Shown piece by piece: positions 1,519 to 21,277 of a stretch of 21,605 nucleotides of DNA. The notes under the pieces are model-generated. The model ran no database searches. It was not told the origin of the DNA and saw nothing but the letters and a program-made list of their open reading frames with translations. Origin of the DNA: Octopus sinensis (taxonomy: Eukaryota); contig NW_021823707.1 in NCBI RefSeq assembly GCF_006345805.1, positions 1 through 21,605 of the forward strand, in the 5' to 3' direction. Position numbers and translations under genes: made by a program. Numbering within the stretch: position 1 is the stretch's first letter; each line of letters starts with the position of its first letter.

Positions 1519-1913
1519 GGGATCTTTTCGGTTTGAACGGCAGTTTTTTCTAGCGGTGTCATATGAAATTGTCACCCATAATTATGACCCTAGAATCGAT
1601 CTGTTGTATTTTAGGGTTAGGGTTAGGGTTTCTTTTTTTCTTCACAAATGTAAATAAACCCAATCTGTTTCTTAAACGGGGGACATATTCATACGGCGCA
1701 GAATGTTTTTACCTCAATAGACGTAAATGATTAGTTGAAATTGCAGAACTGGAAGAAAAAAGGCAACAAATATCTTACAAACTATAGAATTTTCTCAATA
1801 AAGCCAAGAGAAAAAGATGTTTTATAAACACATTCTACCAGTATACGAAGTTTAAAATTTTTTAGTTACCTAGAAATTATGTTAAAAACTGCCGTTCAAA
1901 CCGAAAAGATCCC
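1519..1913. mobile_element. MITE (non-autonomous DNA transposon) with perfect 30-bp TIRs
   Basis: GGGATCTTTTCGGTTTGAACGGCAGTTTTT at 1519-1548 is the exact reverse complement of 1884-1913. ATTTTA flanks both sides (1513-1518, 1914-1919). No ORF inside. Confidence 0.85.
1611..1628 (+). repeat. (TTAGGG)3 telomere-type hexamers inside the MITE
   Basis: Direct reading: TTAGGGTTAGGGTTAGGG. Confidence 0.9.
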
Positions 1914-2575: not shown

Positions 2576-2792
2576 GGCCAGAGAAGGAAAGTCAGAAGTG
2601 AGCTGGGGAAATATTAATACCAGTAATTGACGGGTATATTTTTTATATGTTAACATGCAGTTTGCCAGCTGACTGCTATGCTATGGCGATTACTAGTTCA
2701 CTGTTTACCGGTCAGTATTGTTGCTGTTAGTGCTATTGATACACTCAAGAGGAGGAAATCTATCAATGTAAGAAGCTATATCACATACTCTC

Positions 2793-3012
2793 TCTTTACT
2801 CTTTTACTTGTTTCAGTCAGTTGACTGCGGCCATGCTGGAGCACCGCCTTTAATCGAGCAACTCGACCCCGGGACTTATTCTTTTGTAAGCCCAGTACTT
2901 ATCCTATCAGTCTCTTTTGCTGAACCGCTAAGTGACGGGGACGTAAACACACCAGCATCGGTTGTCAAGCAATGTTGGGGGTGGACAAACACAGACACAC
3001 AAACATATACAT

Positions 3013-3055
<43 letters not shown>

Positions 3056-3217
3056 ATGGGCTTCTTTCAGTTTCCGTCTACCAAATCCACACACAAGGCA
3101 TTGGTCAGCCCGAGGCTATAGCAGAAGACACCTGCCCAAGATGCCACGCAGTGGGACTGAACCCGGAACCATGTGGTTGGTTAGCAAGCTACTTACCTCA
3201 CAGCCACTCCTGCGCCT
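2793..3217 (-). mobile_element. ~410-bp tRNA-derived SINE, family A (resembles octopus OK-type SINE)
   Basis: Minus-strand head GGCGCAGGAGTGGCTGTG..GGTTCCGGGTTCAGTCCC (A and B boxes), internal (TA)n, and AGTAAAAG-type tail. Aligns by eye with copies at 5652, 6729, 13501 and 20861. Family name is from memory. Confidence 0.92.
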
Positions 3218-5651: not shown

Positions 5652-6056
5652 TTTACTCTTTTACTTGTTTCAGTCATTTGACTGCGGCCATGCTGGAGTA
5701 CCGCCTTTAGTCGAGCAAATCGACCCCGGGACTAATTCTTTGTAAGCCCGGTACTTATTCTATCGGTCTCTTTTTGCCGAACTGCTAAGTGACGGGGACG
5801 TAAACACACCAGCATCGGTTGTCAAGCAATGCTAGGGGGACAAACACACACACACAAACACATACACATATATACATATATATACATATATACGACAGGC
5901 TTCTTTCAGTTTCCGTCTACCAAATCCACTCACAAGGCATTGGTCGGCCCGGGGCTATAGCAGAAGACACTTGCCCAAGATGCCACGCAGTGGGACTGAA
6001 CCCGGAACCATGGGTGGTTAGCAAGCTACTTACAACACAGCCACTCCTGCGCCTAT
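5652..6056 (-). mobile_element. SINE family A, full-length copy
   Basis: Same head, body and tail as 2793-3217; B box GGTTCAGTCCC on the minus strand. Confidence 0.92.
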
Positions 6057-6134
6057 ATTCATAATAAAAATTTCAAATTTGTCACAAAGCTAGTAAGTTC
6101 GTGCTAGAGAGTAAGTCAGTTATTTATATGGAGC

Positions 6135-6265
6135 TCAGTACTTCACTGGTACACGTTTTATCGACACCCAAAAATCTGAATGGCAAAGTCGACCTCGATG
6201 GTATTTGAACTCAGAACGTAAAGACGGACGAAATGCCAATGTCCTGGATTTGCCCGGAAATTGAC
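6135..6265 (-). mobile_element. SINE family B (Nin/Deu-like core), degenerate fragment
   Basis: GGCAAAGTCGACCTCG and ATTTGAACTCAGAACGTA are exact reverse complements of segments of the copy at 18347. Confidence 0.75.
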
Positions 6266-6326
6266 GTTGAGCCTTCGGTATTAGTCAAATTGTGGAATGT
6301 ACCGTTGCAGTGTGTCGTTTTTTTTT

Positions 6327-6675
6327 CTTCTCTTCTTCTTCTTCTTCTTCTTCTTCTTCTTCTTCTTCTTCTTCTTCTTCTTCTTCTTCTTCTTCTTCTT
6401 CTTCTTCTTCTTCCAATCAGGACCCACGCCATTAGCCGCAAAGAATAACCTCTAATTCGAGCCTACCCTAAGCTACTAAGAATGCGTGTGGCAACTTGAA
6501 GATCCACCCACCACACGCGATTGACTGGTGGTTGCACGGGTGCAAAAGCTGCGTTGTTATTCTCATTCCGTAAACGGTGACTTTTAACGGGTGGAGAGCT
6601 GAACCATTCTGGGGTACAGAGGATTCGCAATCTAGACTGCTTTGTGCCCTAACCACTGGGCCATTGCGCCTCCAC
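6327..6675 (-). mobile_element. SINE-like element, family C: tRNA-like head plus (AAG)n tail
   Basis: Minus strand begins GTGGAGGCGCAATGGCCCAGTGGTTAGGGCA (A box TGGCCCAGTGG), has a ~230-nt body, and ends in about 28 AAG units (6327-6413). The B box is unclear. Confidence 0.5.
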
Positions 6676-6728: not shown

Positions 6729-7135
6729 TTACTCTCTTTTTCCTTTTTCAGTCATTTGACTGTGGCCCTGCTGGAGCACCGCCTTTAGTCAAGCAAATCG
6801 ATCCCAGGACTTAATCTTTGTAAGCCTAGTACTAATTCTATCGGTCTCTTTTGCCGAACAGCTATGTTACGGCGACGTAAACACACCAGCATCGGTTGTC
6901 AAGCGATGCTGGAGGAACAAACACAGACACACAAAAATATACACACATACATATATATATACATATATACGACGGGCTTCTTTCAGTTTCCATCTACCAA
7001 ATCCACTCACAAGGCTTTGTTCGACCTGAGTCTATAGCAGAAGACACATGCCCAAGATGCCACGCAGTGGGACTGAACCAGGAACCATGTGGTTGGTAAG
7101 CAAGTTACTTACCACACAGACACTCCTACGTCTAT
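6729..7135 (-). mobile_element. SINE family A, full-length copy (more diverged)
   Basis: Aligns with the other family A copies across head, (TA)n and tail. Confidence 0.9.
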
Positions 7136-8789: not shown

Positions 8790-9089
8790 TGAAGCACTGC
8801 CTTGGAGAATTTTTTTTTACTCGAAAGAGTCGGCCCCAGAATTGTGTTAGCCTGCTACTTATTCTATCGGTCTTTCACTGACCGAGTGAGCTATTAGGTT
8901 ACAGGGACACAGCAACACCGGTTGTCAAGTGGTAGTGGTGGTGGTGGTAGGGTGGGGTGGGCAAACACAGACACAAAAACACACAGACAGACAGACGCAT
9001 ACAAGACAAGTGATTTTTCGTCTACCAACTACACTCAGAAAGCTTTGGTCGCATCGAGGCTATAGTAGAAGACAATTGCCCAAGGTGCC
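8790..9089 (-). mobile_element. SINE family A, old degenerate copy lacking the head
   Basis: Contains TACTTATTCTATCGGTCT, CGGTTGTCAAG, CAAACACAGACAC, GCTTTGGTC..GAGGCTATAGTAGAAGACA.TTGCCCAAGGTGCCA in the family order. Confidence 0.7.
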
Positions 9090-9261
9090 ATTCGAAACGT
9101 GGGGTAGGTGAAACAGGGACAACTGAAGAAGGGGAATCTCTTTATGTTGTATGTCTCGTACTCTGTCTTTTTTTCGCTGTTTGAAAAAATGTTCGTTTCT
9201 ATGTTTTTGTTTTCATGTTTTCGTTTCTCCTTGTGTTCAACGTCTTTTTGATGTCCTGTAC

Positions 9262-9366
9262 CCATATATGCATGCATATATACATATATATATATGTAGG
9301 TATGTACATATAAGTATGTATATACGCATATATTTATAGTATTTATATTATGTATATATATATAAT

Positions 9367-9402
<36 letters not shown>

Positions 9403-9461
9403 GTATGTGCATATATGTATATACGCATATATTTATATAGTATTTATATTATGTATATATA

Positions 9462-9494
<33 letters not shown>

Positions 9495-9569
9495 GTTGGT
9501 ATGTGCATATAGGTATGTATATATGCATATACTTATATATTATTTATATTATATATATATACATATATA

Positions 9570-9601
<32 letters not shown>

Positions 9602-9690
9602 CATGTATGTATAGAGTGTGTGTATTTGAGTGCGTGTCTTGCGTGCGTTTGTGTAGCGTGTGTATGCGTGTTGTGTGCGTGTGAGCGTGC
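9262..9690. repeat. TA/TG microsatellite field with ~100-bp higher-order unit x3
   Basis: TGT(A/T)GGTATGT recurs at 9295, 9398 and 9494, followed by similar AT-rich units, then a (TG)n-rich stretch. Confidence 0.85.
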
Positions 9691-11952: not shown

Positions 11953-13500
11953 TATCACATGTTACGAGTGAAAGATTGGCTATAACGCCACAAAAATATT
12001 ACGTGTCCAGTTACGATTTACGAATTTCCATGGATATCTTTGATTGGTGGATGGTTTTTGTCAGGGAGTTATAATTAATTTTCAACTTCCAGGAATGATT
12101 AAAGTTTTAAAATAGTCTTAAGCCTTCTAATGTATGTTCAGGGAGTCAGTTTAGAGAAGAACTATTTCGCAAACAGAATTCTCAAGCTATCTCATCTAGA
12201 AATACATCTTTAGTGTAACTAGATTTTCAAAAGAAATAATATTCACTAAAGCGATAACTGTAGGATTTTCACATTTTCCAACTCTTAGTTTTGTAATGAA
12301 AGAACATGATAACTCAGTATTACGGACATCTGGGAAAAGGTTTGCTGAATTATTTTCCCCTTATATGGTAACATACTCTTACTATCTCTTACACATAAAA
12401 CTTAGTAAACAGTAAACCATTTGAAAACTTTGCTAACTTTGCAAGAATCCAAATATAACACCCTAGTACTAATGCATCTGCAAATGGCAAGAAATCATTA
12501 GTTTATCCATTGCACCCATTTAAACTTGTTCGTATAATCTTTTGAAATTGTTATTTACGTGAGCTTTGTACATACGAATTGGTAAAACTATTCGTCGAAT
12601 ATTACTGTCTTGTGACTATTATACAAAAGTTCATCTTGCACTGAAAGTATAATAACCATTCAAGATATACGCACTAACATCAGCTTCAGAATTTCGATAC
12701 CCAAATGGTACAACTTGAAGAAAAGTTACGAGAAAACAAGAAAAGACACCAACGGAGCAACATTCTTCCTGCAAACCAGCATAGTCCACATTGTGATTTC
12801 TCAGCTAGATCACGTGCTGGTTTAATAATTCATGATTATTCTCATATCTTATATTTTGATTTTGGTGGCCTCAGGACTCATATGAAGAGTCACAAGTTAA
12901 AGTGAACGAAACAATTTAAAATTAAACTGAAGGAATACTCAGTACATTTGGTAGAGTATAAATTTATAATTCTTTAACAGTTTAAATATAAACTTTTGGC
13001 CAGCTAAGCTATCATCGGATTGCGAGGCAGTTGAGTTCATCCTTAATTTATATAGATTCTGATAGGTTAGAATCCTTCAGGTTAAGCTGAATTCTGTTGA
13101 ATGATAATCAAGATGTATGGTAGGTTGTGGTAATTTGACGTTATGGAGAATTTTTATTGCTTAAATTTATGCAAGTGCTAATTAGAATTTATTTATACAT
13201 GTAGAACATTCTAATTACGATTACGTATATTCATATGTATATGTCTGTGTGTGCGTATGAGCAGGTGTGGATGTGTGTCAAGTATATATATATATATACA
13301 CACATATATATATCCATATATGCACAGGTGTAAGCCATATGGAATTTTGTGTATATGAGAGAGTATGTTTCTCCGTATGCATATTTAAAAAGTCATTATT
13401 TATATTTATATGCGTGTATACAAATATTTATACATACACACCTACACCCGTCAATATTGTAATCTGCTGTATAATTTCCTTAGTATGTCCTGTATATACC

Positions 13501-13686
13501 CTTTTACTTGTTTCAGTCATTTGACTGCGGCTATGCTGGAGCACCGGCTTTAGTTGAGGAAATCGACCCCCAGGACTTATTCTTTGTAAGCCTAGTACTT
13601 ATTCTATCGGGATCTTTTGCCGAACCGCTAAGTTACGGGGACGTAAACACACCAGCATCGGTTGTCAAGCGATGTTGTGGAGACAA

Positions 13687-13717
<31 letters not shown>

Positions 13718-13863
13718 CATATATACGACGGGCTTCTTTCAGTTTCCGTCTACCAAATCCACTCGCAAGGCTTTGGTCGGCCCGAGTCTTTAGTAGAAGA
13801 CACTTGCCCAAGGAACCCGGAACCATGTGGTTGGTAAGCAAGCTACTTACCACACAGCCACTC
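13501..13863 (-). mobile_element. SINE family A copy with 18-nt deletion through the B box
   Basis: Reads CCCAAG-GAACCCGG where other copies read CCCAAG(A/G)TGCCACGCAGTGGGACTGAACCCGG. About 10 nt of the 5' end is also missing. Confidence 0.9.
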
Positions 13864-14149: not shown

Positions 14150-14610
14150 ACATATAAAAGTACATACATACATACATACATAATACATACATACATGCAT
14201 ACATACACACATATACACATACATATACATACACATATATATATACATGCATACATACATTCATATATATATATATACAGTGTATATATTTATATACAAA
14301 TATATATATATATATATACATATATATACGCCTACGTGTATCTGCATGTATATTTGTATGTGTGTATATATATACATATATATACATATGTACATATAAA
14401 TATGTAGATGTATACATATATATGTGTAGATGTATATATATACATATGAGTGTATATATATTTTTATATATTATATATACATATACATATATATATATAT
14501 ATTATATATACATATACATATATATATATATTATATATATATATATATCTATATATATATATATATGTATATATATATAAATATATTTATATATATATGT
14601 ATATACATAC

Positions 14611-14651
<41 letters not shown>

Positions 14652-14677
14652 ATATATATATATATGTATATATATAC
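14150..14677. repeat. ~530-bp TA/TACA/TATG microsatellite field
   Basis: Direct reading; it is the source of the I/Y-only ORFs. Confidence 0.95.
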
Positions 14678-15354
14678 AGAAAGTCTTGAAGATTTCGTTG
14701 CCATTCATTTATATTTCGAGATAAATTGCAACCAGATTCTTGTTGCGTTTGACATTTCCCCAGAGAAAATACTTCACTGGCACTTGATATATGCTACCAT
14801 CATTTGAATATTATTGTACGCAATTAAGTACGCCAGTGAGGGGTTGACACGGCAGGTAGTAAAAAAAATACATAAGCATATAGAATGAAAGAAAAATAAA
14901 CGCGTTTTATAAAATCCTTGATGTAAAGCAAATTCTTCAATTGTCACTCCTGTCGTTTTGGTCAGAACATTCTGAGAAGTAACTAGCAGTGCAGTAAAAG
15001 GAGTTAATGAGGATAAGAAAAGAATCACCCTCTAAAGATATTTCAGCTTTTGATATAATACTCCCGGTTTGAAAGATTGAAAATCATGACTTAAAAATTC
15101 TTCCATCATTACTGTGAATGCAAATCTGCCGTTCGATAATGAGGTTGTAATAAGCCTGAAAATTGCTCAGAGTTATTTCCCATACTCAGCTGAAAATGAA
15201 AGTAGCGATAGTGTTCTAAAAATATCGTAGTCAGTTTCATGCTTTGTCTTTTACGATGCATATAAAAACATTAATATATCTTAATTAAATTTAAGTTAGA
15301 TAATGTGGGTATTTCAATCAATTTTAACACGCCTTCTCGTCCTATGCATTTGTG

Positions 15355-15546
15355 ATCTTGTTCTTCTTGTTCTTCTTGTTCTTGTTCTTGTTCTTGTTCT
15401 TGTTCTTGTTCTTCTTTTTCTTCATTTTTCTTCAACTTCTTCTTCTTCTTTTTCTTCATTTTCTTCTTCTTTTTCTTCTTTATCCTCTTCTTCTTCTTCA
15501 AATTCTTCTTCCTCTTCTTCTTCTTCTCTTCTTCTTCTTCTTCTTC

Positions 15547-15616
<70 letters not shown>

Positions 15617-15705
15617 CATCATCATCATCATCATTATTCTTACTATTATGATGATGATGGTCATCATCATCTTCATCATCATCTTCATCATAATCATCAT
15701 TATTA
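15355..15705. repeat. Compound array (GTTCTT)n-(CTT)n-(TTA)n-(TCA)n
   Basis: Direct reading. Confidence 0.95.
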
Positions 15706-16003: not shown

Positions 16004-16174
16004 ATAGACATGGCTGTGTAGTAAGAAGCTTGCTTTCCAGCCGCAAAGCTACGGGTTCAATTCCACTGTGTGTCACCTTTGGCAGGTGTCCTCTACAATA
16101 GCTTCGGGTCCACCAAAGCCCTGTGAATGGATTTGGTTGACGGAAACTGAAAGAAGCCCATCGTATATATATAT
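16004..16174 (+). mobile_element. SINE family A, head plus body only, ending in (TA)n
   Basis: TGGCTGTGTAGTAAG (A box), GGGTTCAATTCC (B box), then CCAAAGCCCTGTGAATGGATTTGGTTGACGGAAACTGAAAGAAGCCCATCGTATAT, the reverse complement of the minus-strand copies. Confidence 0.85.
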
Positions 16175-16177
16175 AAG

Positions 16178-17650: not shown

Positions 17651-17779
17651 TGTATTTTTTTGTGTGTGTAAGTGTGTGTAAGTGTGTGTCTGTGTTTGTG
17701 CACCCACCATTACTTGACAACTTGTCAAAATCTGTGCGAGTATGTAAGTGTGTGTAAATCACTACACCCCTAGTTATCT

Positions 17780-17912
17780 TTCATTTTGTTTTACTCATCA
17801 GATTGCAGCCTCGCTGGGGCACCAGCTTGATGAATTGCTAGGAGAATAAATCGACTCCGGTACTTATTTGCTGAAGGTTGGCGCTAATTCTGTCGGTGTC
17901 TGTCGCCGAACC
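17780..17912 (-). mobile_element. Highly degenerate SINE family A tail
   Basis: GCTGGGGCACC, AAATCGACTCCGGTACTTATT and TCTGTCGGTGTCTGTCGCCGAACC echo the family A tail in order. Confidence 0.45.
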
Positions 17913-17914
17913 CC

Positions 17915-18217
17915 TCTCACGAGTTCATTAATGTTTATCAGATTGTCCTTTTACTTCATCTTCCGAGCCATTCTCGTCTTTAGACTATTTCCTTTGCAGA
18001 CTTCGTCTAAGATCGATAATTCCCATCGGAAGTTCTCAATTTCCTTATTTCTAATGCGCTTTTTCTACCTTGGCTGTTTGTTTCCTTGTCTGGGAGACAT
18101 TTCCTTTATTTTGACGCCTGTTGTCTGTGTAGCAGCAATAGATATTGAGTATATAACATAGTTTAATGAAGTTGAATCTGTCGCCGTTTCAAGGAGAATC
18201 TGCTTCAGGGCACCGTG
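17915..18217 (-). mobile_element. Dong/R4-type LINE internal remnant (region N-terminal to RT)
   Basis: Minus frame reads GALKQILLETATDSTSLNYVIYSISIAATQTTGVKIKEMSPRQGNKQPR*KKRIRNKEIENFRWELSILDEVCKGNSLKTRMARKMK*. This resembles the T.LN..IY...A....G.KI.....P.W..RI...I...R..LS.L.E pattern I recall from R4/Dong ORFs; the stop sits at the expected W. Confidence 0.55.
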
Positions 18218-18267
18218 ATATTATTTTGACAGTACAGTGATTCGCTCGGGTGTAATTATTGTTGCTT

Positions 18268-18279
18268 TTGTTGTTGTTG

Positions 18280-18346
<67 letters not shown>
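18268..18346. repeat. (GTT)n-(ATT)n array
   Basis: Direct reading. Confidence 0.95.
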
Positions 18347-18347
<1 letters not shown>

Positions 18348-18565
18348 AGGTGGCGAGCTGGCAGAATTGTTAGCACGCCGGGCAAAATGCTTAGCGGTAT
18401 CTCGTCTACCGCTACGTTCTGAGTTCAAATTCCGCCGAGGTCGACTTTGCCTTTCATTCTTTCGCGGAGTGGCGGTCGAAAAATTAAATACTAGTGAAAC
18501 ACTGTGGTCGATGTTAGCGATTAATTCGCTGCCCCCCAAATTTCAGGCCTTTTGTCTTGAGTAGA

Positions 18566-18608
<43 letters not shown>
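18347..18608 (+). mobile_element. SINE family B (tRNA head, Nin/Deu-like core) with (TTA)n tail
   Basis: A box TGGCAGAATTG, B box GAGTTCAAATTCC, core GGTCGACTTTGCCTTTCATTCTTT...GGTCGAAAAATTAAATACTAG resembling the Nin/Deu domain GTCGAC.CAGCCTTCCATCCTT.CG.GGTCG.TAAA.TGAGTACC. About 80% similar by eye to the 20426 copy. Confidence 0.85.
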
Positions 18609-18710
18609 GAGTGAGCAGTGCATGCCATCAAAGTGACACTGGTGTAAAATATACGAAGCCCAATATACCCATCATGACTACCCGTCTGATAAGGGTACAC
18701 CAGGCACATG
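18609..18710 (-). mobile_element. Truncated (102-bp) copy of the ~550-bp unclassified element
   Basis: Near-identical to the left end of 19294-19843 (GAGTGAG..CATGCCATCAAAGTGACACTGG...CCAGGCACATG), abutting (ATT)n. Strand is inferred from which end is retained. Confidence 0.8.
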
Positions 18711-19256
18711 GTACAACAGGTTCAGCAGATGCTGACCGAGGTCCAACAAGGGAGTGGTCGCGCACCCATGCGGTCAGTGAAAGTCAACATATGTATTTAC
18801 TACCACCACAGTCAATAGGAGCAATGGCAGTCCTCGAAGAGAATCGACTTACGTTGTTCTGTTTCAATTCCAGATTGAAAGGGGAAAATATACATGCATT
18901 GCTGATTCATTTTTCTTTTTTACAATATTAAATGAAGCCTTGTTGCGCTTTACAGCTTTTTTGAGTTTGTGATTTGCAAATATGAGAGTTACTTATCTTC
19001 TGCGCTTGTTATCAGTTCTGGAAACTACTCTGACTTTCGGATTTTTTTACTTGATACAAAAGAGAAATGTTTGCTTGTTTAAGAAACTCGAAGAAATTAA
19101 GGGATTACGAACTCATAAAGATTCTCTTATCGTAAATTTGCTGAAGTTAGATAGCCGGAGGAGCTTAAGAGTGTTTTTGCGATTAAAGAGATATTTATAT
19201 ATAAGCGAATTATCACAGAGAAAGAAATTTTGAATACTGACAGAAGAAATTGTAGA

Positions 19257-19258
<2 letters not shown>

Positions 19259-19293
<35 letters not shown>
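19259..19293. repeat. (ATT)n array
   Basis: Direct reading. Confidence 0.95.
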
Positions 19294-19841
19294 GAGTGAG
19301 AGAGCAGTTCATGCCATCAAAGTGACACTGGGGTAAAATATACGAAGCCCAATATACCCATCATGACTACCGTCTGATAAAGGTACACCAGGCACATGCA
19401 TCACAACCATTGTGCGCAACATGGTGATCTCATATCAAGATAAACAGCACATGACCTTGCAGGTGGGCCCAGTTAGAATTTTCTTCAGGTTGAGTAGCCC
19501 ATCCCGCTCAAACGGTCCCTGAATAAGGGTTGTTTAAGGATGTTGAAAGAACCACCCATGTTTCCAGAGGTGAACTATCAAACCCCAAAGAATCCCTCTC
19601 AACACATGCTATGATGCTCCCCCACTACTTCTGCTCATGATCAGAGATGCACATATCGTCAGCACTAAGGGACATGCTCAACTGGTTAAGGTCAAACAAC
19701 TGACAAGCAAATCTGTGGTATTGAGCAGAATATTTGCTGTAGCCCATCTTTTATACCAAGACAAAACAATGTATATGATAACACTTCCAATCAGTTAAGA
19801 TCAGAAGCCATAAGAGCCACTGCCTGGTACTGCATCAGGGC

Positions 19842-19843
<2 letters not shown>
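19294..19843 (-). mobile_element. ~550-bp unclassified non-coding interspersed element embedded in (ATT)n
   Basis: Complex, GC-richer sequence sharply bounded by (ATT)n on both sides. A second partial copy lies at 18609. No TIR, long ORF or clear tRNA head seen. Confidence 0.75.
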
Positions 19844-19919
<76 letters not shown>

Positions 19920-19959
19920 CATCATCATCATCATTATTATTATTATTATTATTATTATT
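19844..19959. repeat. (ATT)n array with (ATC)n interruption
   Basis: Direct reading; it also serves as the tail or target of the adjacent Dong-like fragment. Confidence 0.95.
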
Positions 19960-20289
19960 CAGTAGTTTTATTTTTATAGCGTGCTTTCACTTCACTACCG
20001 AGCGCAGCTCTGTGTGCCTTGGGTATGTGCTGTGATTTGTTGTGATGCTCTGATGGTTATTGTATGGAAAGTGTTCTGCGTAGGATGTGTGCAGTGCCTA
20101 GTAGTGCAATTTTCTGTATGTTATATGTGCTTGTAAGTCCTGGTGTTTTTGTTATGTATTTGTCTGAATATTTTTTATCATGCTAATGCACCTACTATGA
20201 TAGGAATTGTTTCTGTTTTCAGGTTCCACATTCTAGTTACTTCTATTTCCAGGTCTTTGTATTTGAGAGTTTCTCCATTTCTTTTAGAG

Positions 20290-20290
<1 letters not shown>
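19960..20290 (-). mobile_element. Dong/R4-clade LINE 3' end: restriction-like endonuclease C-terminus, stop and ~95-nt 3' UTR
   Basis: With three 1-nt corrections the minus strand reads SLKEMEKLSKYKDLEIEVTRMWNLKTETIPIIVGALGMIKKYSDKYITKTPGLTSTYNIQKIALLGTAHILRRTLSIQ* (stop at 20057-20059). This fits the EK..KY.DL..E..RMW...IPI.VGALG...IQK.ALLGTAHILR pattern of R4/Dong RLE domains. (TAA)n lies on both sides. Confidence 0.88.
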
Positions 20291-20323
<33 letters not shown>

Positions 20324-20374
20324 TATTATTATTATTATTATTATTTTATTATTATTACTATTATTATATTATTA

Positions 20375-20425
<51 letters not shown>
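20291..20425. repeat. Imperfect (ATT)n array
   Basis: Direct reading. Confidence 0.95.
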
Positions 20426-20426
<1 letters not shown>

Positions 20427-20655
20427 AGGTGGTGATCTGGCAGAATTGTTGGCGCGATGGACGAAATGCTTAACGGTATTTCGCGCGTCTCTACATTCTG
20501 AGTTCAAACTCCACCGAAGTCGACTATGCCTTTCACCTTTTCGGGGTCGATAAATTAAGTACACATTGAACACTAGGGTCGATATGATCGACTCATACCC
20601 TACCCAAAACTGCTTCTCTTGTTGTAATATTTGAAACCATGATTGTCATTATTAT
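20426..20655 (+). mobile_element. SINE family B copy
   Basis: AAGGTGGTGATCTGGCAGAATTG...GAGTTCAAACTCC...GTCGACTATGCCTTTCACCTTTTCGGGGTCGATAAATTAAGTAC; aligns with the 18347 copy. Confidence 0.85.
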
Positions 20656-20783
20656 ATAAGTACTAGTTGAGTACTGAGGGGTTCATGTTATTGATGTTGA
20701 TGTCGTAGCTGTAGTTGTCGATGATGGATTTTTCTTGCCTACACGAGTTAATGGTTATCTGTTTGCTTCACCTCTTTCTTTTA

Positions 20784-20860
<77 letters not shown>

Positions 20861-20862
<2 letters not shown>

Positions 20863-21076
20863 CTCTTTACTCTTTTACTCTTTTACTTGTTTCAGTCATT
20901 TGACTGCGGCCATGCTGGAGCACCGCCTTTAGTCGAGCAAATCGACCCCGGGACTTATTCTTTGTAAGCCCAGTACTTATTCTATCGGTCTCTTTTGCCG
21001 AACCGCTAAGTGACGGGGACGTAAACACACACCAGCATCGGTTGTCAAGCAATGCTATGAGGACATAGACACACAA

Positions 21077-21111
<35 letters not shown>

Positions 21112-21277
21112 CGACAGGCTTCTTTCAGTTTCCGTCTACCAAATCCACTCACAAGGCATTGGTCGACCCGGGGCTATAGCAGAAGACACTTGCCCAAGAT
21201 GCCACACAGTGGGATTGAACCCAGAACCATGTGGTTGGTTAGCAAGCTACTTACCACACAGCCACTCCTGCGCCTAT
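20861..21277 (-). mobile_element. SINE family A, full-length copy with expanded (AGTAAAAG)n tail
   Basis: Minus-strand head ATAGGCGCAGGAGTGGCTGTGTGGTAAG...GGGTTCAATCCC; tail unit TACTCTTT repeated about 3 times at 20861-20885. Confidence 0.92.

What the first reader, a model, noticed from the sequence alone, without database searches (positions are those of the whole stretch)
17915..20655. (TAA)n-microsatellite retroelement nest: LINE remnants, an orphan element and SINEs strung along ATT arrays
Seen: five ATT/TTA arrays (18268-18346, 18569-18608, 19259-19293, 19844-19959, 20291-20425) directly adjoin, in order, SINE B, a truncated 550-bp element, the full 550-bp element, a Dong/R4 RLE fragment and SINE B. 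A second Dong-like remnant lies just left of them. Established: the R4-clade element Dong inserts into TAA repeats using a restriction-like endonuclease. Inference: the arrays are a self-renewing landing pad, since each insertion adds TAA tail and so creates more target, shared by an autonomous LINE and non-autonomous passengers.
Basis: partly seen in the sequence, partly recalled or inferred. Interest (0 to 1): 0.7.

Follow-up and report, generated by a model that had tools for sequence, protein, structure and literature searches.

The report
Retroelement pile-up in octopus TAA microsatellites
A 2.4-kb stretch of octopus-like DNA holds five TAA/ATT microsatellites with a truncated Dong-type jumping gene and three or four short retroelements wedged between them, which is the expected footprint of a known TAA-targeting retrotransposon family and not a new kind of system.

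Summary
Five (ATT)n arrays, all with ATT on the + strand, each directly adjoin on their right SINE B, a 102-bp copy of the 550-bp element, the 550-bp element, a LINE fragment and SINE B again.

The LINE fragment (19960-20290, minus strand) is the last ~75 codons plus a 97-nt 3'UTR of a restriction-like-endonuclease (RLE) LINE. It has (TAA)n on both sides in its own sense. Relatives fetched from other animals have sense-strand (TAA)n tails, (TAA)n directly upstream of 5'-truncated copies, and similar strings of copies. This fits the published TAA specificity of Dong.

Three parts of the interpretation fail or weaken:
- The "second Dong remnant" (17915-18260) has no detectable Dong homology.
- SINE B lies in the opposite orientation to the LINE, so its own tail would be (AUU)n, and it shares no 3' sequence with the LINE. 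It is probably not a Dong passenger.
- The 550-bp element is known from only 1.2 copies.

SINE B's head abuts an ATT array in all three full copies seen, including an independent cephalopod-like contig with the same SINE B-(TAA)n-truncated Dong layout. The SINE-associated arrays therefore look like the original pads. Tandem duplication is excluded. This is a new instance of a known kind, of modest interest.

The parts
17915..18258 (.). It is not part of the system as far as can be shown.
   Evidence: No hit to the RT+RLE profile in any frame. No similarity to the LINE fragment, to cephalopod Dong contigs or to anything else in the window. Positions 17777-17915, just to its left, are a diverged SINE-A-like 3' domain.
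18259..18347 (+). Array A: (TTG)8 followed by (TTA)21. It abuts the 5' head of SINE B copy 1.
   Evidence: TRF rows 18259-18284 and 18283-18346, 100% pure. The junction reads TTATTATA|AGGTGGCGAGC.
18348..18568 (+). SINE B copy 1: tRNA-like head with a conserved core (GTCGATAAATTAAGTAC...).
   Evidence: 75% identical to copy 2 and 78.6% to the SINE in contig L011. An A-box-like TGGCAGAATTG sits at position 13 on the + strand, as in all three copies. The 3' end is ...AGTAGAAAG.
18569..18608 (.). Array B: 13 pure units. Read on the + strand it is the (ATT)n tail of SINE B copy 1. Read on the minus strand it is the (TAA)13 tail of the truncated 550 copy.
   Evidence: TRF 100%. The same junction, ATTATT|GAGTGAG, occurs at array C.
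18609..18710 (-). 102-bp copy of the 550-bp element that keeps only the end next to the array. It is read as a 5'-truncated retrocopy.
   Evidence: 94-95% identical to 19294-19398. Homology stops at ...GGCACATG.
18711..19257 (.). Spacer with no repeat or coding signal. It is probably the original unique DNA between two separate pads.
   Evidence: No self-similarity and no profile hit.
19258..19293 (-). Array C: (TAA)12 tail of the 550-bp element.
   Evidence: TRF 100% pure.
19294..19843 (-). 550-bp non-coding orphan element bounded by arrays on both sides.
   Evidence: Longest stop-free stretches are 74 codons (+) and 41 codons (-). There are no pol III boxes and no Dong profile hit. Its 3' end is unlike the LINE 3'UTR (z < 1). 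The orientation is inferred from the truncated copy.
19844..19959 (-). Array D: (TAA)38 with a GAT/ATC block. It is the tail of the LINE fragment and also the 5' flank of the 550-bp element.
   Evidence: TRF 98%. It begins 97 nt after the LINE stop codon. Relatives carry their first sense (AAT)n array 67-150 nt after the ORF end.
19960..20290 (-). 5'-truncated Dong-type RLE LINE copy: the last ~75 codons (two stops and one frameshift), a stop at 20059-20057, and a 97-nt 3'UTR.
   Evidence: phmmer with the 36-aa piece gave 359 hits at E<=1e-3. Its closest named relative is the O. bimaculoides protein P0271 (85% identical to P0003). Profile positions 559-636 of 637 are matched. The fragment is 80-83% identical in DNA to cephalopod-like contigs L012-L015. 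Homologues carry RT, a CCHC motif and an RPD...D...K RLE motif, and they align to R2 structures through the RLE.
20291..20426 (.). Array E: 46 units and the most decayed. It lies between the 5' end of the LINE fragment and the head of SINE B copy 2, and is read as the remainder of the original target array.
   Evidence: TRF 92% matches, 5% indels. The junction reads TTATTATA|AGGTGGTGATC.
20427..20659 (+). SINE B copy 2: body to about 20637, then a decayed ATT-type tail CATGATTGTCATTATTATATAA.
   Evidence: The layout LINE(-)-array-SINE B(+) is repeated in the independent contig L011.

Best explanation
The region holds two (TAA)n/(TTA)n microsatellite pads, each anchored at a tRNA-derived SINE (SINE B, + strand). 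They have been hit repeatedly by retroelements that integrate in the opposite orientation, with (TAA)n tails.

The one identifiable machine is a Dong/R4-type LINE encoding a restriction-like endonuclease. The inferred mechanism has three steps:
1. The endonuclease nicks the TTA strand of the repeat.
2. The exposed ...TTA-3'OH pairs with the (UAA)n end of the element RNA and primes reverse transcription (target-primed reverse transcription).
3. Synthesis often stops early, which gives 5'-truncated copies.
Each event leaves repeat on both sides of the insert and adds a fresh tail, so the number of arrays grows.

Most parsimonious history:
1. SINE B copy 2 sat behind one array. A 331-bp LINE 3' end inserted into that array and split it into arrays E and D.
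2. The 550-bp element then inserted into the left part, giving arrays D and C.
3. Separately, a 102-bp truncated 550 copy inserted into the (ATT)n tail of SINE B copy 1, giving array B.
4. Array A, at the head of copy 1, is still unoccupied.

Shown: the identity, strand and truncation of the LINE piece; arrays on both of its sides; the same behaviour in relatives; the recurrence of the SINE B-array-Dong layout.

Inferred: which strand is nicked; that the 550-bp element uses the Dong machinery; the order of events; that SINE B is mobilised by a different LINE with an ATT-type tail, with tail-target pairing favouring ATT arrays.
For: - Arrays and neighbours.
- LINE identity. The fragment matches the C-terminal end of a family with RT, CCHC and PD-D-K motifs. 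That family aligns to R2 structures 9nl3 and 9dou at E~5e-27.
- Family behaviour in 80 independent loci. The first array after the ORF end is sense (AAT)n in 23 of 48 loci and never ATT (background 0.07, p~2e-14). There are 98 sense AAT arrays against 20 ATT arrays overall. Sense (AAT)n lies within 250 bp upstream of 11 of 20 apparently 5'-truncated copies (background 0.10, p~9e-7). Strings of truncated copies separated by arrays occur in L047, L067 and L087.
- TARA loci L001 and L003 show the same pattern.
- Contig L011 has antisense SINE B head-(TAA)4-5'-truncated Dong, with a different truncation point and non-homologous flanks.
- Array purity fits the proposed order: B and C are 100% pure next to the youngest elements (94% pair), and E is the most decayed.
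- Literature: (TAA)n is the Dong target in molluscs and other groups (PMC7998251, PMC3812793). Dong-R4 is abundant and recently active in Octopus vulgaris (PMC13282606).
Against: - Only one LINE copy and 1.2 copies of the 550-bp element are available.
- No octopus genome could be searched.
- The 550-bp element shares nothing with the LINE 3'UTR except the repeat. An R2-like enzyme would be expected to need that 3'UTR.
- The truncated 550 copy has no repeat on its 5' side.
- The orientation of the 550-bp element rests only on the truncation argument.
- Clade placement within the RLE LINEs (R4/Dong against Hero or others) was not tested by phylogeny.
- SINE B's tRNA-like head is not recognised by ARAGORN or Rfam. 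Its strand therefore rests on box-like motifs, on the layout of its ends and on the variable phase of its 5' junctions.
Confidence: 0.68

Rival explanations
1. All four elements, SINE B included, are (TAA)n-tailed passengers or copies mobilised by the same Dong LINE. Each array is the tail of the element on its right.
For: Every array has an element directly on its right. Read on the minus strand, the nest is a regular string of element-tail units, like the Dong strings in L047, L067 and L087. L011 repeats the SINE B-(TAA)n-Dong order.
Against: - On the minus strand, SINE B would be antisense to its A-box-like and B-box-like motifs.
- All four copies also carry ATT-type runs at the other end: (ATT)13, ATTATT, ATGATTGTCATTATTAT and TTATTATGAATA. 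This fits a + strand element with an (ATT)n tail.
- The phase of the head-array junction differs between L011 and the window copies, unlike a templated tail.
- There is no 3' similarity to the LINE.
Confidence: 0.1
2. SINE B is itself specific for the same microsatellite but on the other strand. A different LINE with an ATT-type tail (for example an RTE or CR1 family), or tail-target pairing alone, places it into (ATT)n. The two element systems would then feed each other's targets.
For: The head abuts an ATT array in 3 of 3 full copies, and an ATT-type run follows the 3' end in 4 of 4 copies. The strand relation is always the same. RTE elements carry varied 3' microsatellites, including (ATT)n (PMC2887409). 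RTE is the dominant active LINE in octopus (PMC9115989, PMC8967140).
Against: The sample is only three or four copies, two of them in the same 2.4 kb. No ATT-tailed LINE was identified. The adjacency could arise because later Dong events or array expansion happened next to abundant SINEs.
Confidence: 0.4
3. There is no targeting. The arrays are only 3' tails that later expanded by slippage, and the elements lie together by chance in a repeat-rich region.
For: The window is very rich in SINEs and microsatellites. The truncated 550 copy has no array at its 5' end.
Against: The five arrays of the finding cover about 1.8% of the window, yet the 5' ends of the LINE fragment, the 550-bp element and both SINE B copies all touch one. 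Relatives show upstream arrays at 11 of 20 truncated copies against a background of 0.10. TAA targeting is published for Dong.
Confidence: 0.07
4. The cluster arose by local duplication or unequal crossing-over between arrays, not by serial insertion.
For: Two element families each occur twice within 2.4 kb. The duplicated 550 segment includes its array, with nearly the same length (12 against 13 units).
Against: The order is not collinear: SINE B-550 in one half and 550-LINE-SINE B in the other. The identities differ strongly (75% against 94%). The flanks of the duplicated pieces are unrelated.
Confidence: 0.08

Closest known systems
Dong / R4-clade non-LTR retrotransposons (Bombyx Dong, DongAg, DongBg of the snail Biomphalaria; annotated as Dong-R4 in Octopus genomes)
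   Same: Both have a restriction-like endonuclease at the C-terminus, a (TAA)n tail in sense and (TAA)n on the 5' side as well. Both show frequent 5' truncation and occur in molluscs and cnidarians. The window fragment matches the C-terminal end of such proteins and has the same 3'UTR length as its relatives.
   Different: Only 331 bp survive here, with no RT or catalytic residues. Placement in the R4 clade, as opposed to another RLE clade, was not tested by phylogeny.
R2 (28S rDNA-specific RLE LINE; solved structures 8gh6, 9nl3, 9dou)
   Same: Homologues of the fragment align to R2 from the RT domain to the RLE and the K-Y-K-x-L-E C-terminal motif. The TPRT mechanism is taken from R2.
   Different: The target is a microsatellite, not rDNA. 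Identity is low. There is no evidence here for the R2-type N-terminal zinc-finger/Myb architecture.
SINEU / Tx1-Mar, and other SINE-LINE pairs that share a target (Kojima 2015, PMC4494074)
   Same: Both involve the idea that a non-autonomous element found at the same specific target as a site-specific LINE is mobilised by it.
   Different: Here the tRNA-type SINE lies in the opposite orientation with the complementary tail. Only the 550-bp orphan shares strand and tail with the LINE.
RTE-borne microsatellite families (Tay et al. 2010, PMC2887409) and microsatellite birth from retroelement tails (PMC3812793)
   Same: Element tails seed and multiply microsatellites. SINE B's (ATT)n tail behaves this way.
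   Different: Those elements are not repeat-specific. Here the seeded repeat is also the target of another element family.

Membership tests
Dong/R4-clade RLE LINE | C-terminal restriction-like endonuclease domain (CCHC, then PD...D/E...K) downstream of the RT domain | tested here: inconclusive
   The fragment aligns to positions 559-636 of 637 of a profile built from homologues (E 3e-13 and 9e-10). Those homologues carry PF00078 RT, a CCHC motif and an RPD...D...K motif, and they align to R2 through the RLE. The catalytic part itself is missing from this truncated copy.
Dong/R4-clade RLE LINE | (TAA)n tail on the sense strand at the 3' end | tested here: met
   (TAA)38 begins 97 nt after the stop codon. 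In relatives, sense (AAT)n is the first downstream array in 23 of 48 loci and ATT never is.
Dong/R4-clade RLE LINE | Insertion into pre-existing (TAA)n, shown by repeat at the 5' junction as well | tested here: met
   Array E abuts the truncated 5' end. L011 has (TAA)4 at its 5' junction. 11 of 20 truncated relatives have sense (AAT)n upstream, p~9e-7. No empty site was available for this copy.
Dong/R4-clade RLE LINE | RT phylogeny places the element in the R4 clade and not in R2, NeSL, CRE or Hero | not testable with these tools
   The fragment has no RT, and no reference set of clade representatives was at hand. The octopus literature annotates such elements as Dong-R4 (PMC13282606, PMC9115989).
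tRNA-derived SINE (SINE B; Deu-type core by recollection) | Pol III A and B boxes in a tRNA-like 5' head | tested here: inconclusive
   An A-box-like TGGCAGAATYG (2 mismatches) sits at position 13 of the + strand in 3 of 3 copies. The B-box-like GAGTTCAAAYWCC has 3 mismatches. ARAGORN and Rfam call no tRNA.
Passenger of the Dong LINE (SINE B) | Same orientation relative to the repeat, and the same (TAA)n tail or 3' end as the LINE | tested here: not met
   SINE B has the opposite orientation and an ATT-type run at its 3' end in 4 of 4 copies. It has no 3' similarity to the LINE (z about 1).
Passenger of the Dong LINE (550-bp element) | Same strand and tail as the LINE, 5'-truncated copies, and a shared 3' end | tested here: inconclusive
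   The strand, the (TAA)12-13 tail and one 5'-truncated copy fit. The 3' end is unlike the LINE 3'UTR. Only 1.2 copies are known, both in this locus.

The most novel reading that the evidence does not exclude
The same microsatellite is used on its two strands by two different retroelement systems. A Dong-type LINE with its (TAA)n-tailed dependants uses one strand, and an abundant tRNA-derived SINE with an (ATT)n tail, itself array-specific, uses the other. Each system would keep regenerating the other's landing sites, and the SINE would seed most TAA arrays in the octopus genome.
Probability: 0.25. Interest if true: 0.55.

Novelty: new member of a known kind. Interest (0 to 1): 0.3.

Why it matters
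The region shows, in one readable locus, how a microsatellite-specific LINE builds strings of truncated copies and multiplies its own target. It also suggests that in octopus, whose genome is unusually rich in SINEs and Dong-R4 elements, many TAA repeats may be tied to one SINE family. If the opposite-strand relation holds genome-wide, it would explain part of the microsatellite and SINE landscape of cephalopod genomes. It would also be a tidy case of two mobile-element families sharing one safe harbour. As it stands, the region is mainly a good annotation example and not a discovery.

Tried and rejected
- Rfam at gathering and at permissive thresholds, and ARAGORN at default and lowered thresholds, gave no tRNA or other RNA family for either SINE. 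The only exceptions were very weak calls at 80-90% threshold.
- Exact-pattern scans for the SINE B core in JGI metagenomes, IMG/VR and GTDB genomes found 0 matches. These collections therefore hold no usable octopus DNA.
- Ten window ORFs were looked up and none is in the protein collection.
- P0003 has no contig on record.
- The SINE B antisense ORF, used as a probe for other head-array junctions, found no homologue.
- Contigs L012-L015 are too short or chimeric to show tails.
- 3'-end comparisons between the LINE, the 550-bp element, SINE B and the left segment gave nothing above shuffles. A 13-nt match CTGCWTCAGGGCA has z<1.
- Pol III box and ORF scans of the 550-bp element were negative.
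- Rejected: tandem duplication of the cluster.
- Rejected: Dong identity of 17915-18260.
- Rejected: L011 as an orthologue of the window locus. Its flanks are not homologous and its truncation point differs.
Full report
**What is there.** The window is AT-rich animal DNA full of microsatellites and SINEs. The closest named relative of its best protein match is an Octopus bimaculoides protein. TRF finds five (ATT)n arrays inside the finding:
- Array A at 18283-18346, preceded by (TTG)8.
- Array B at 18569-18608.
- Array C at 19258-19293.
- Array D at 19844-19959.
- Array E at 20290-20425.

A sixth array lies at 15547-15649. All six have ATT on the + strand. A masked self-comparison shows which sequences between the arrays are repeated. 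SINE B occurs at 18348-18568 and 20427-~20637 (about 75% identical), with a diverged inverted relative at 6055-6237. The left 102 bp of a 550-bp element (19294-19843) recur at 18609-18710 with 94-95% identity.

**The LINE fragment.** On the minus strand, 20288-20181 reads SKRNGETLKYKDLEIEVTRMWNLKTETIPIIVGALA. After two stops and a frameshift, it continues ...KIALLGTAHILRRTLSIQ*.

A search of the 36-residue piece against 1.84 billion representatives gave 359 hits at E<=1e-3. Its closest named relative is an O. bimaculoides protein (P0271, 85% identical to P0003). Longer hits (Exaiptasia P0010, Nicrophorus P0137) show that this motif closes a domain with a CCHC motif and an RPD...D...K motif downstream of a reverse transcriptase.

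A profile built from 60 RT+RLE homologues was run against the six-frame pieces of the window, each stop-free piece searched separately. It hits only 20345-20181 and 20182-20060, at profile positions 559-636 of 637. A homologue aligns to solved R2 proteins from the RT to the same K-Y-K-x-L-E motif.

The fragment is therefore the last ~75 codons plus a 97-nt 3'UTR of an RLE-type LINE, 5'-truncated at about 20290. In its own sense it has (TAA)n both downstream (array D) and upstream (array E).

**Is that family TAA-specific?** I fetched 80 loci encoding relatives of the C-terminal domain from metagenome contigs that carry animal DNA.
- 48 loci reach the ORF end and have enough downstream sequence. 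In 23 of them the first perfect array is sense (AAT)n, 67-150 nt after the ORF. In none is it ATT. Several others start with AAT-derived units. Against a background of 0.07 this gives p~2e-14.
- Over all loci there are 98 sense AAT arrays against 20 ATT arrays.
- The match starts inside the domain in 20 loci. In 11 of these, sense (AAT)n lies within 250 bp upstream, mostly abutting the copy. The background is 0.10, so p~9e-7.
- L047, L067 and L087 contain strings of truncated copies separated by arrays. TARA loci L001 and L003 show the same.

This agrees with the literature. (TAA)n is the Dong target in insects, molluscs (DongBg) and cnidarians (PMC3812793, PMC7998251). Dong-R4 elements are abundant and recently active in Octopus vulgaris (PMC13282606; see also PMC9115989, PMC8967140). 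RT phylogeny could not be done on a fragment that lacks the RT.

**The "second Dong remnant".** Positions 17915-18260 give no profile hit in any frame and match nothing else. Positions 17777-17915 are a diverged 3' domain of the window's other SINE family. This part of the finding is not supported.

**SINE B.** Several lines of evidence indicate that SINE B reads 5'->3' on the + strand, opposite to the LINE:
- An A-box-like motif sits at position 13 and a B-box-like GAGTTCAAAYWCC about 60 nt further on, both on the + strand of all copies.
- Each subfamily has a constant 3' end, AGTAGAAAG or TTTGAAA.
- ATT-type runs follow that 3' end in 4 of 4 copies.
- The phase of the head-array junction differs by one nucleotide between copies, unlike a templated tail.

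ARAGORN and Rfam do not recognise the head, so this is not airtight. I recall its core (CCTTTCA..TTTCGGGGTCGATAAATTAAGTACC) as Deu-like, and octopus SINEs are annotated tRNA-Deu and tRNA-Core (PMC8967140). The Deu assignment is recollection, not a test.

An RNA ending in (AUU)n cannot pair with the TTA-strand primer that serves a (UAA)n-tailed RNA. SINE B also shares no 3' sequence with the LINE. It is therefore unlikely to be a Dong passenger.

Even so, its head abuts an ATT array in all three full copies. The third copy is in an independent 743-bp cephalopod-like contig, L011. L011 carries antisense SINE B head-(TAA)4-5'-truncated Dong, with another truncation point and unrelated flanks. The association of SINE B with this microsatellite is real in this small sample, and the arrays next to it look like the original pads.

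**The 550-bp element.** It has no ORF, no pol III boxes and no Dong signal. The short copy keeps exactly the end that touches the array, with 13 units against 12 and the same junction phase. The simplest reading is a minus-strand element with a (TAA)n tail and one 5'-truncated retrocopy. That means the same strand and tail as the LINE, which fits mobilisation by it. Its 3' end is unlike the LINE 3'UTR, and only 1.2 copies are known. I put the minus orientation at about 70%.

**History and rivals.** The most economical history is the one given under the best explanation:
1. There were two SINE-anchored pads.
2. The LINE fragment and then the 550-bp element inserted in series into the pad upstream of SINE B copy 2.
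3. A truncated 550 copy inserted into the tail of SINE B copy 1.

Array purity fits this order: B and C are pure, and E is the most decayed.

Tandem duplication is excluded by the non-collinear order and by the 75% against 94% identities. Chance adjacency is unlikely. The five arrays of the finding cover about 1.8% of the window, yet four element 5' ends touch one.

**Limits.** No octopus genome was reachable.

**Verdict.** This is a clear local example of the known TAA-specific Dong behaviour in a cephalopod, with strings of copies and array multiplication that also occur in relatives elsewhere. The passenger role is plausible for the 550-bp orphan, unsupported for SINE B and wrong for the left segment. 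The one point that could be new is the opposite-strand, array-bound SINE.

Noticed in passing
window 2790-3217, 5652-6054, 6734-7133, 13490-13863, 20834-21275; partial 8816-9090; inverted 16011-16175; diverged piece 17777-17915: A second SINE family with about 420-bp copies. Its tRNA-like head is on the minus strand. It has a CORE-like CTTGGGCAAGTG motif, an internal (CA)n(TA)n microsatellite and an (AAGAGTA)n-type tail. The copies are 80-93% identical to one another.
   Followed up: partly
window 6055-6413: The diverged SINE-B-like copy (minus strand) ends exactly at the head of a SINE A copy (6054/6055). About 85 nt beyond the point where its homology stops there is a pure (TTC)30 array at 6325-6413. 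This may be another element-microsatellite association.
   Followed up: no
window 15356-15700: A compound microsatellite, (TCT)n-(TTA)34-(TCA)n. Its TTA-to-TCA transition is 94% identical over 115 nt to array D (19844-19958). No element is recognisable beside it.
   Followed up: partly
window 1611-1630: An interstitial run of 3.3 perfect TTAGGG telomere-type units.
   Followed up: no
window 9276-9683 and 14150-14678: Two long, impure (AT)n/(TG)n/(TACA)n tracts that match each other in inverted orientation (about 75-79% over about 145 nt). This is probably low-complexity similarity only.
   Followed up: no
L012:24-494 and L014:480-918: Two high-coverage metagenome contigs carry the same internal piece of a cephalopod-like Dong RLE domain, with identical start and end points but different flanks. 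It looks like a fragment captured inside another repeat, or an assembly chimera.
   Followed up: no
L066:3159-6489: In a termite-gut metagenome contig, two Dong-like copies lie head to head in opposite orientations, with ATT arrays beside the inverted copy and AAT arrays beside the direct one. Each copy therefore keeps the TAA strand as its sense strand.
   Followed up: partly
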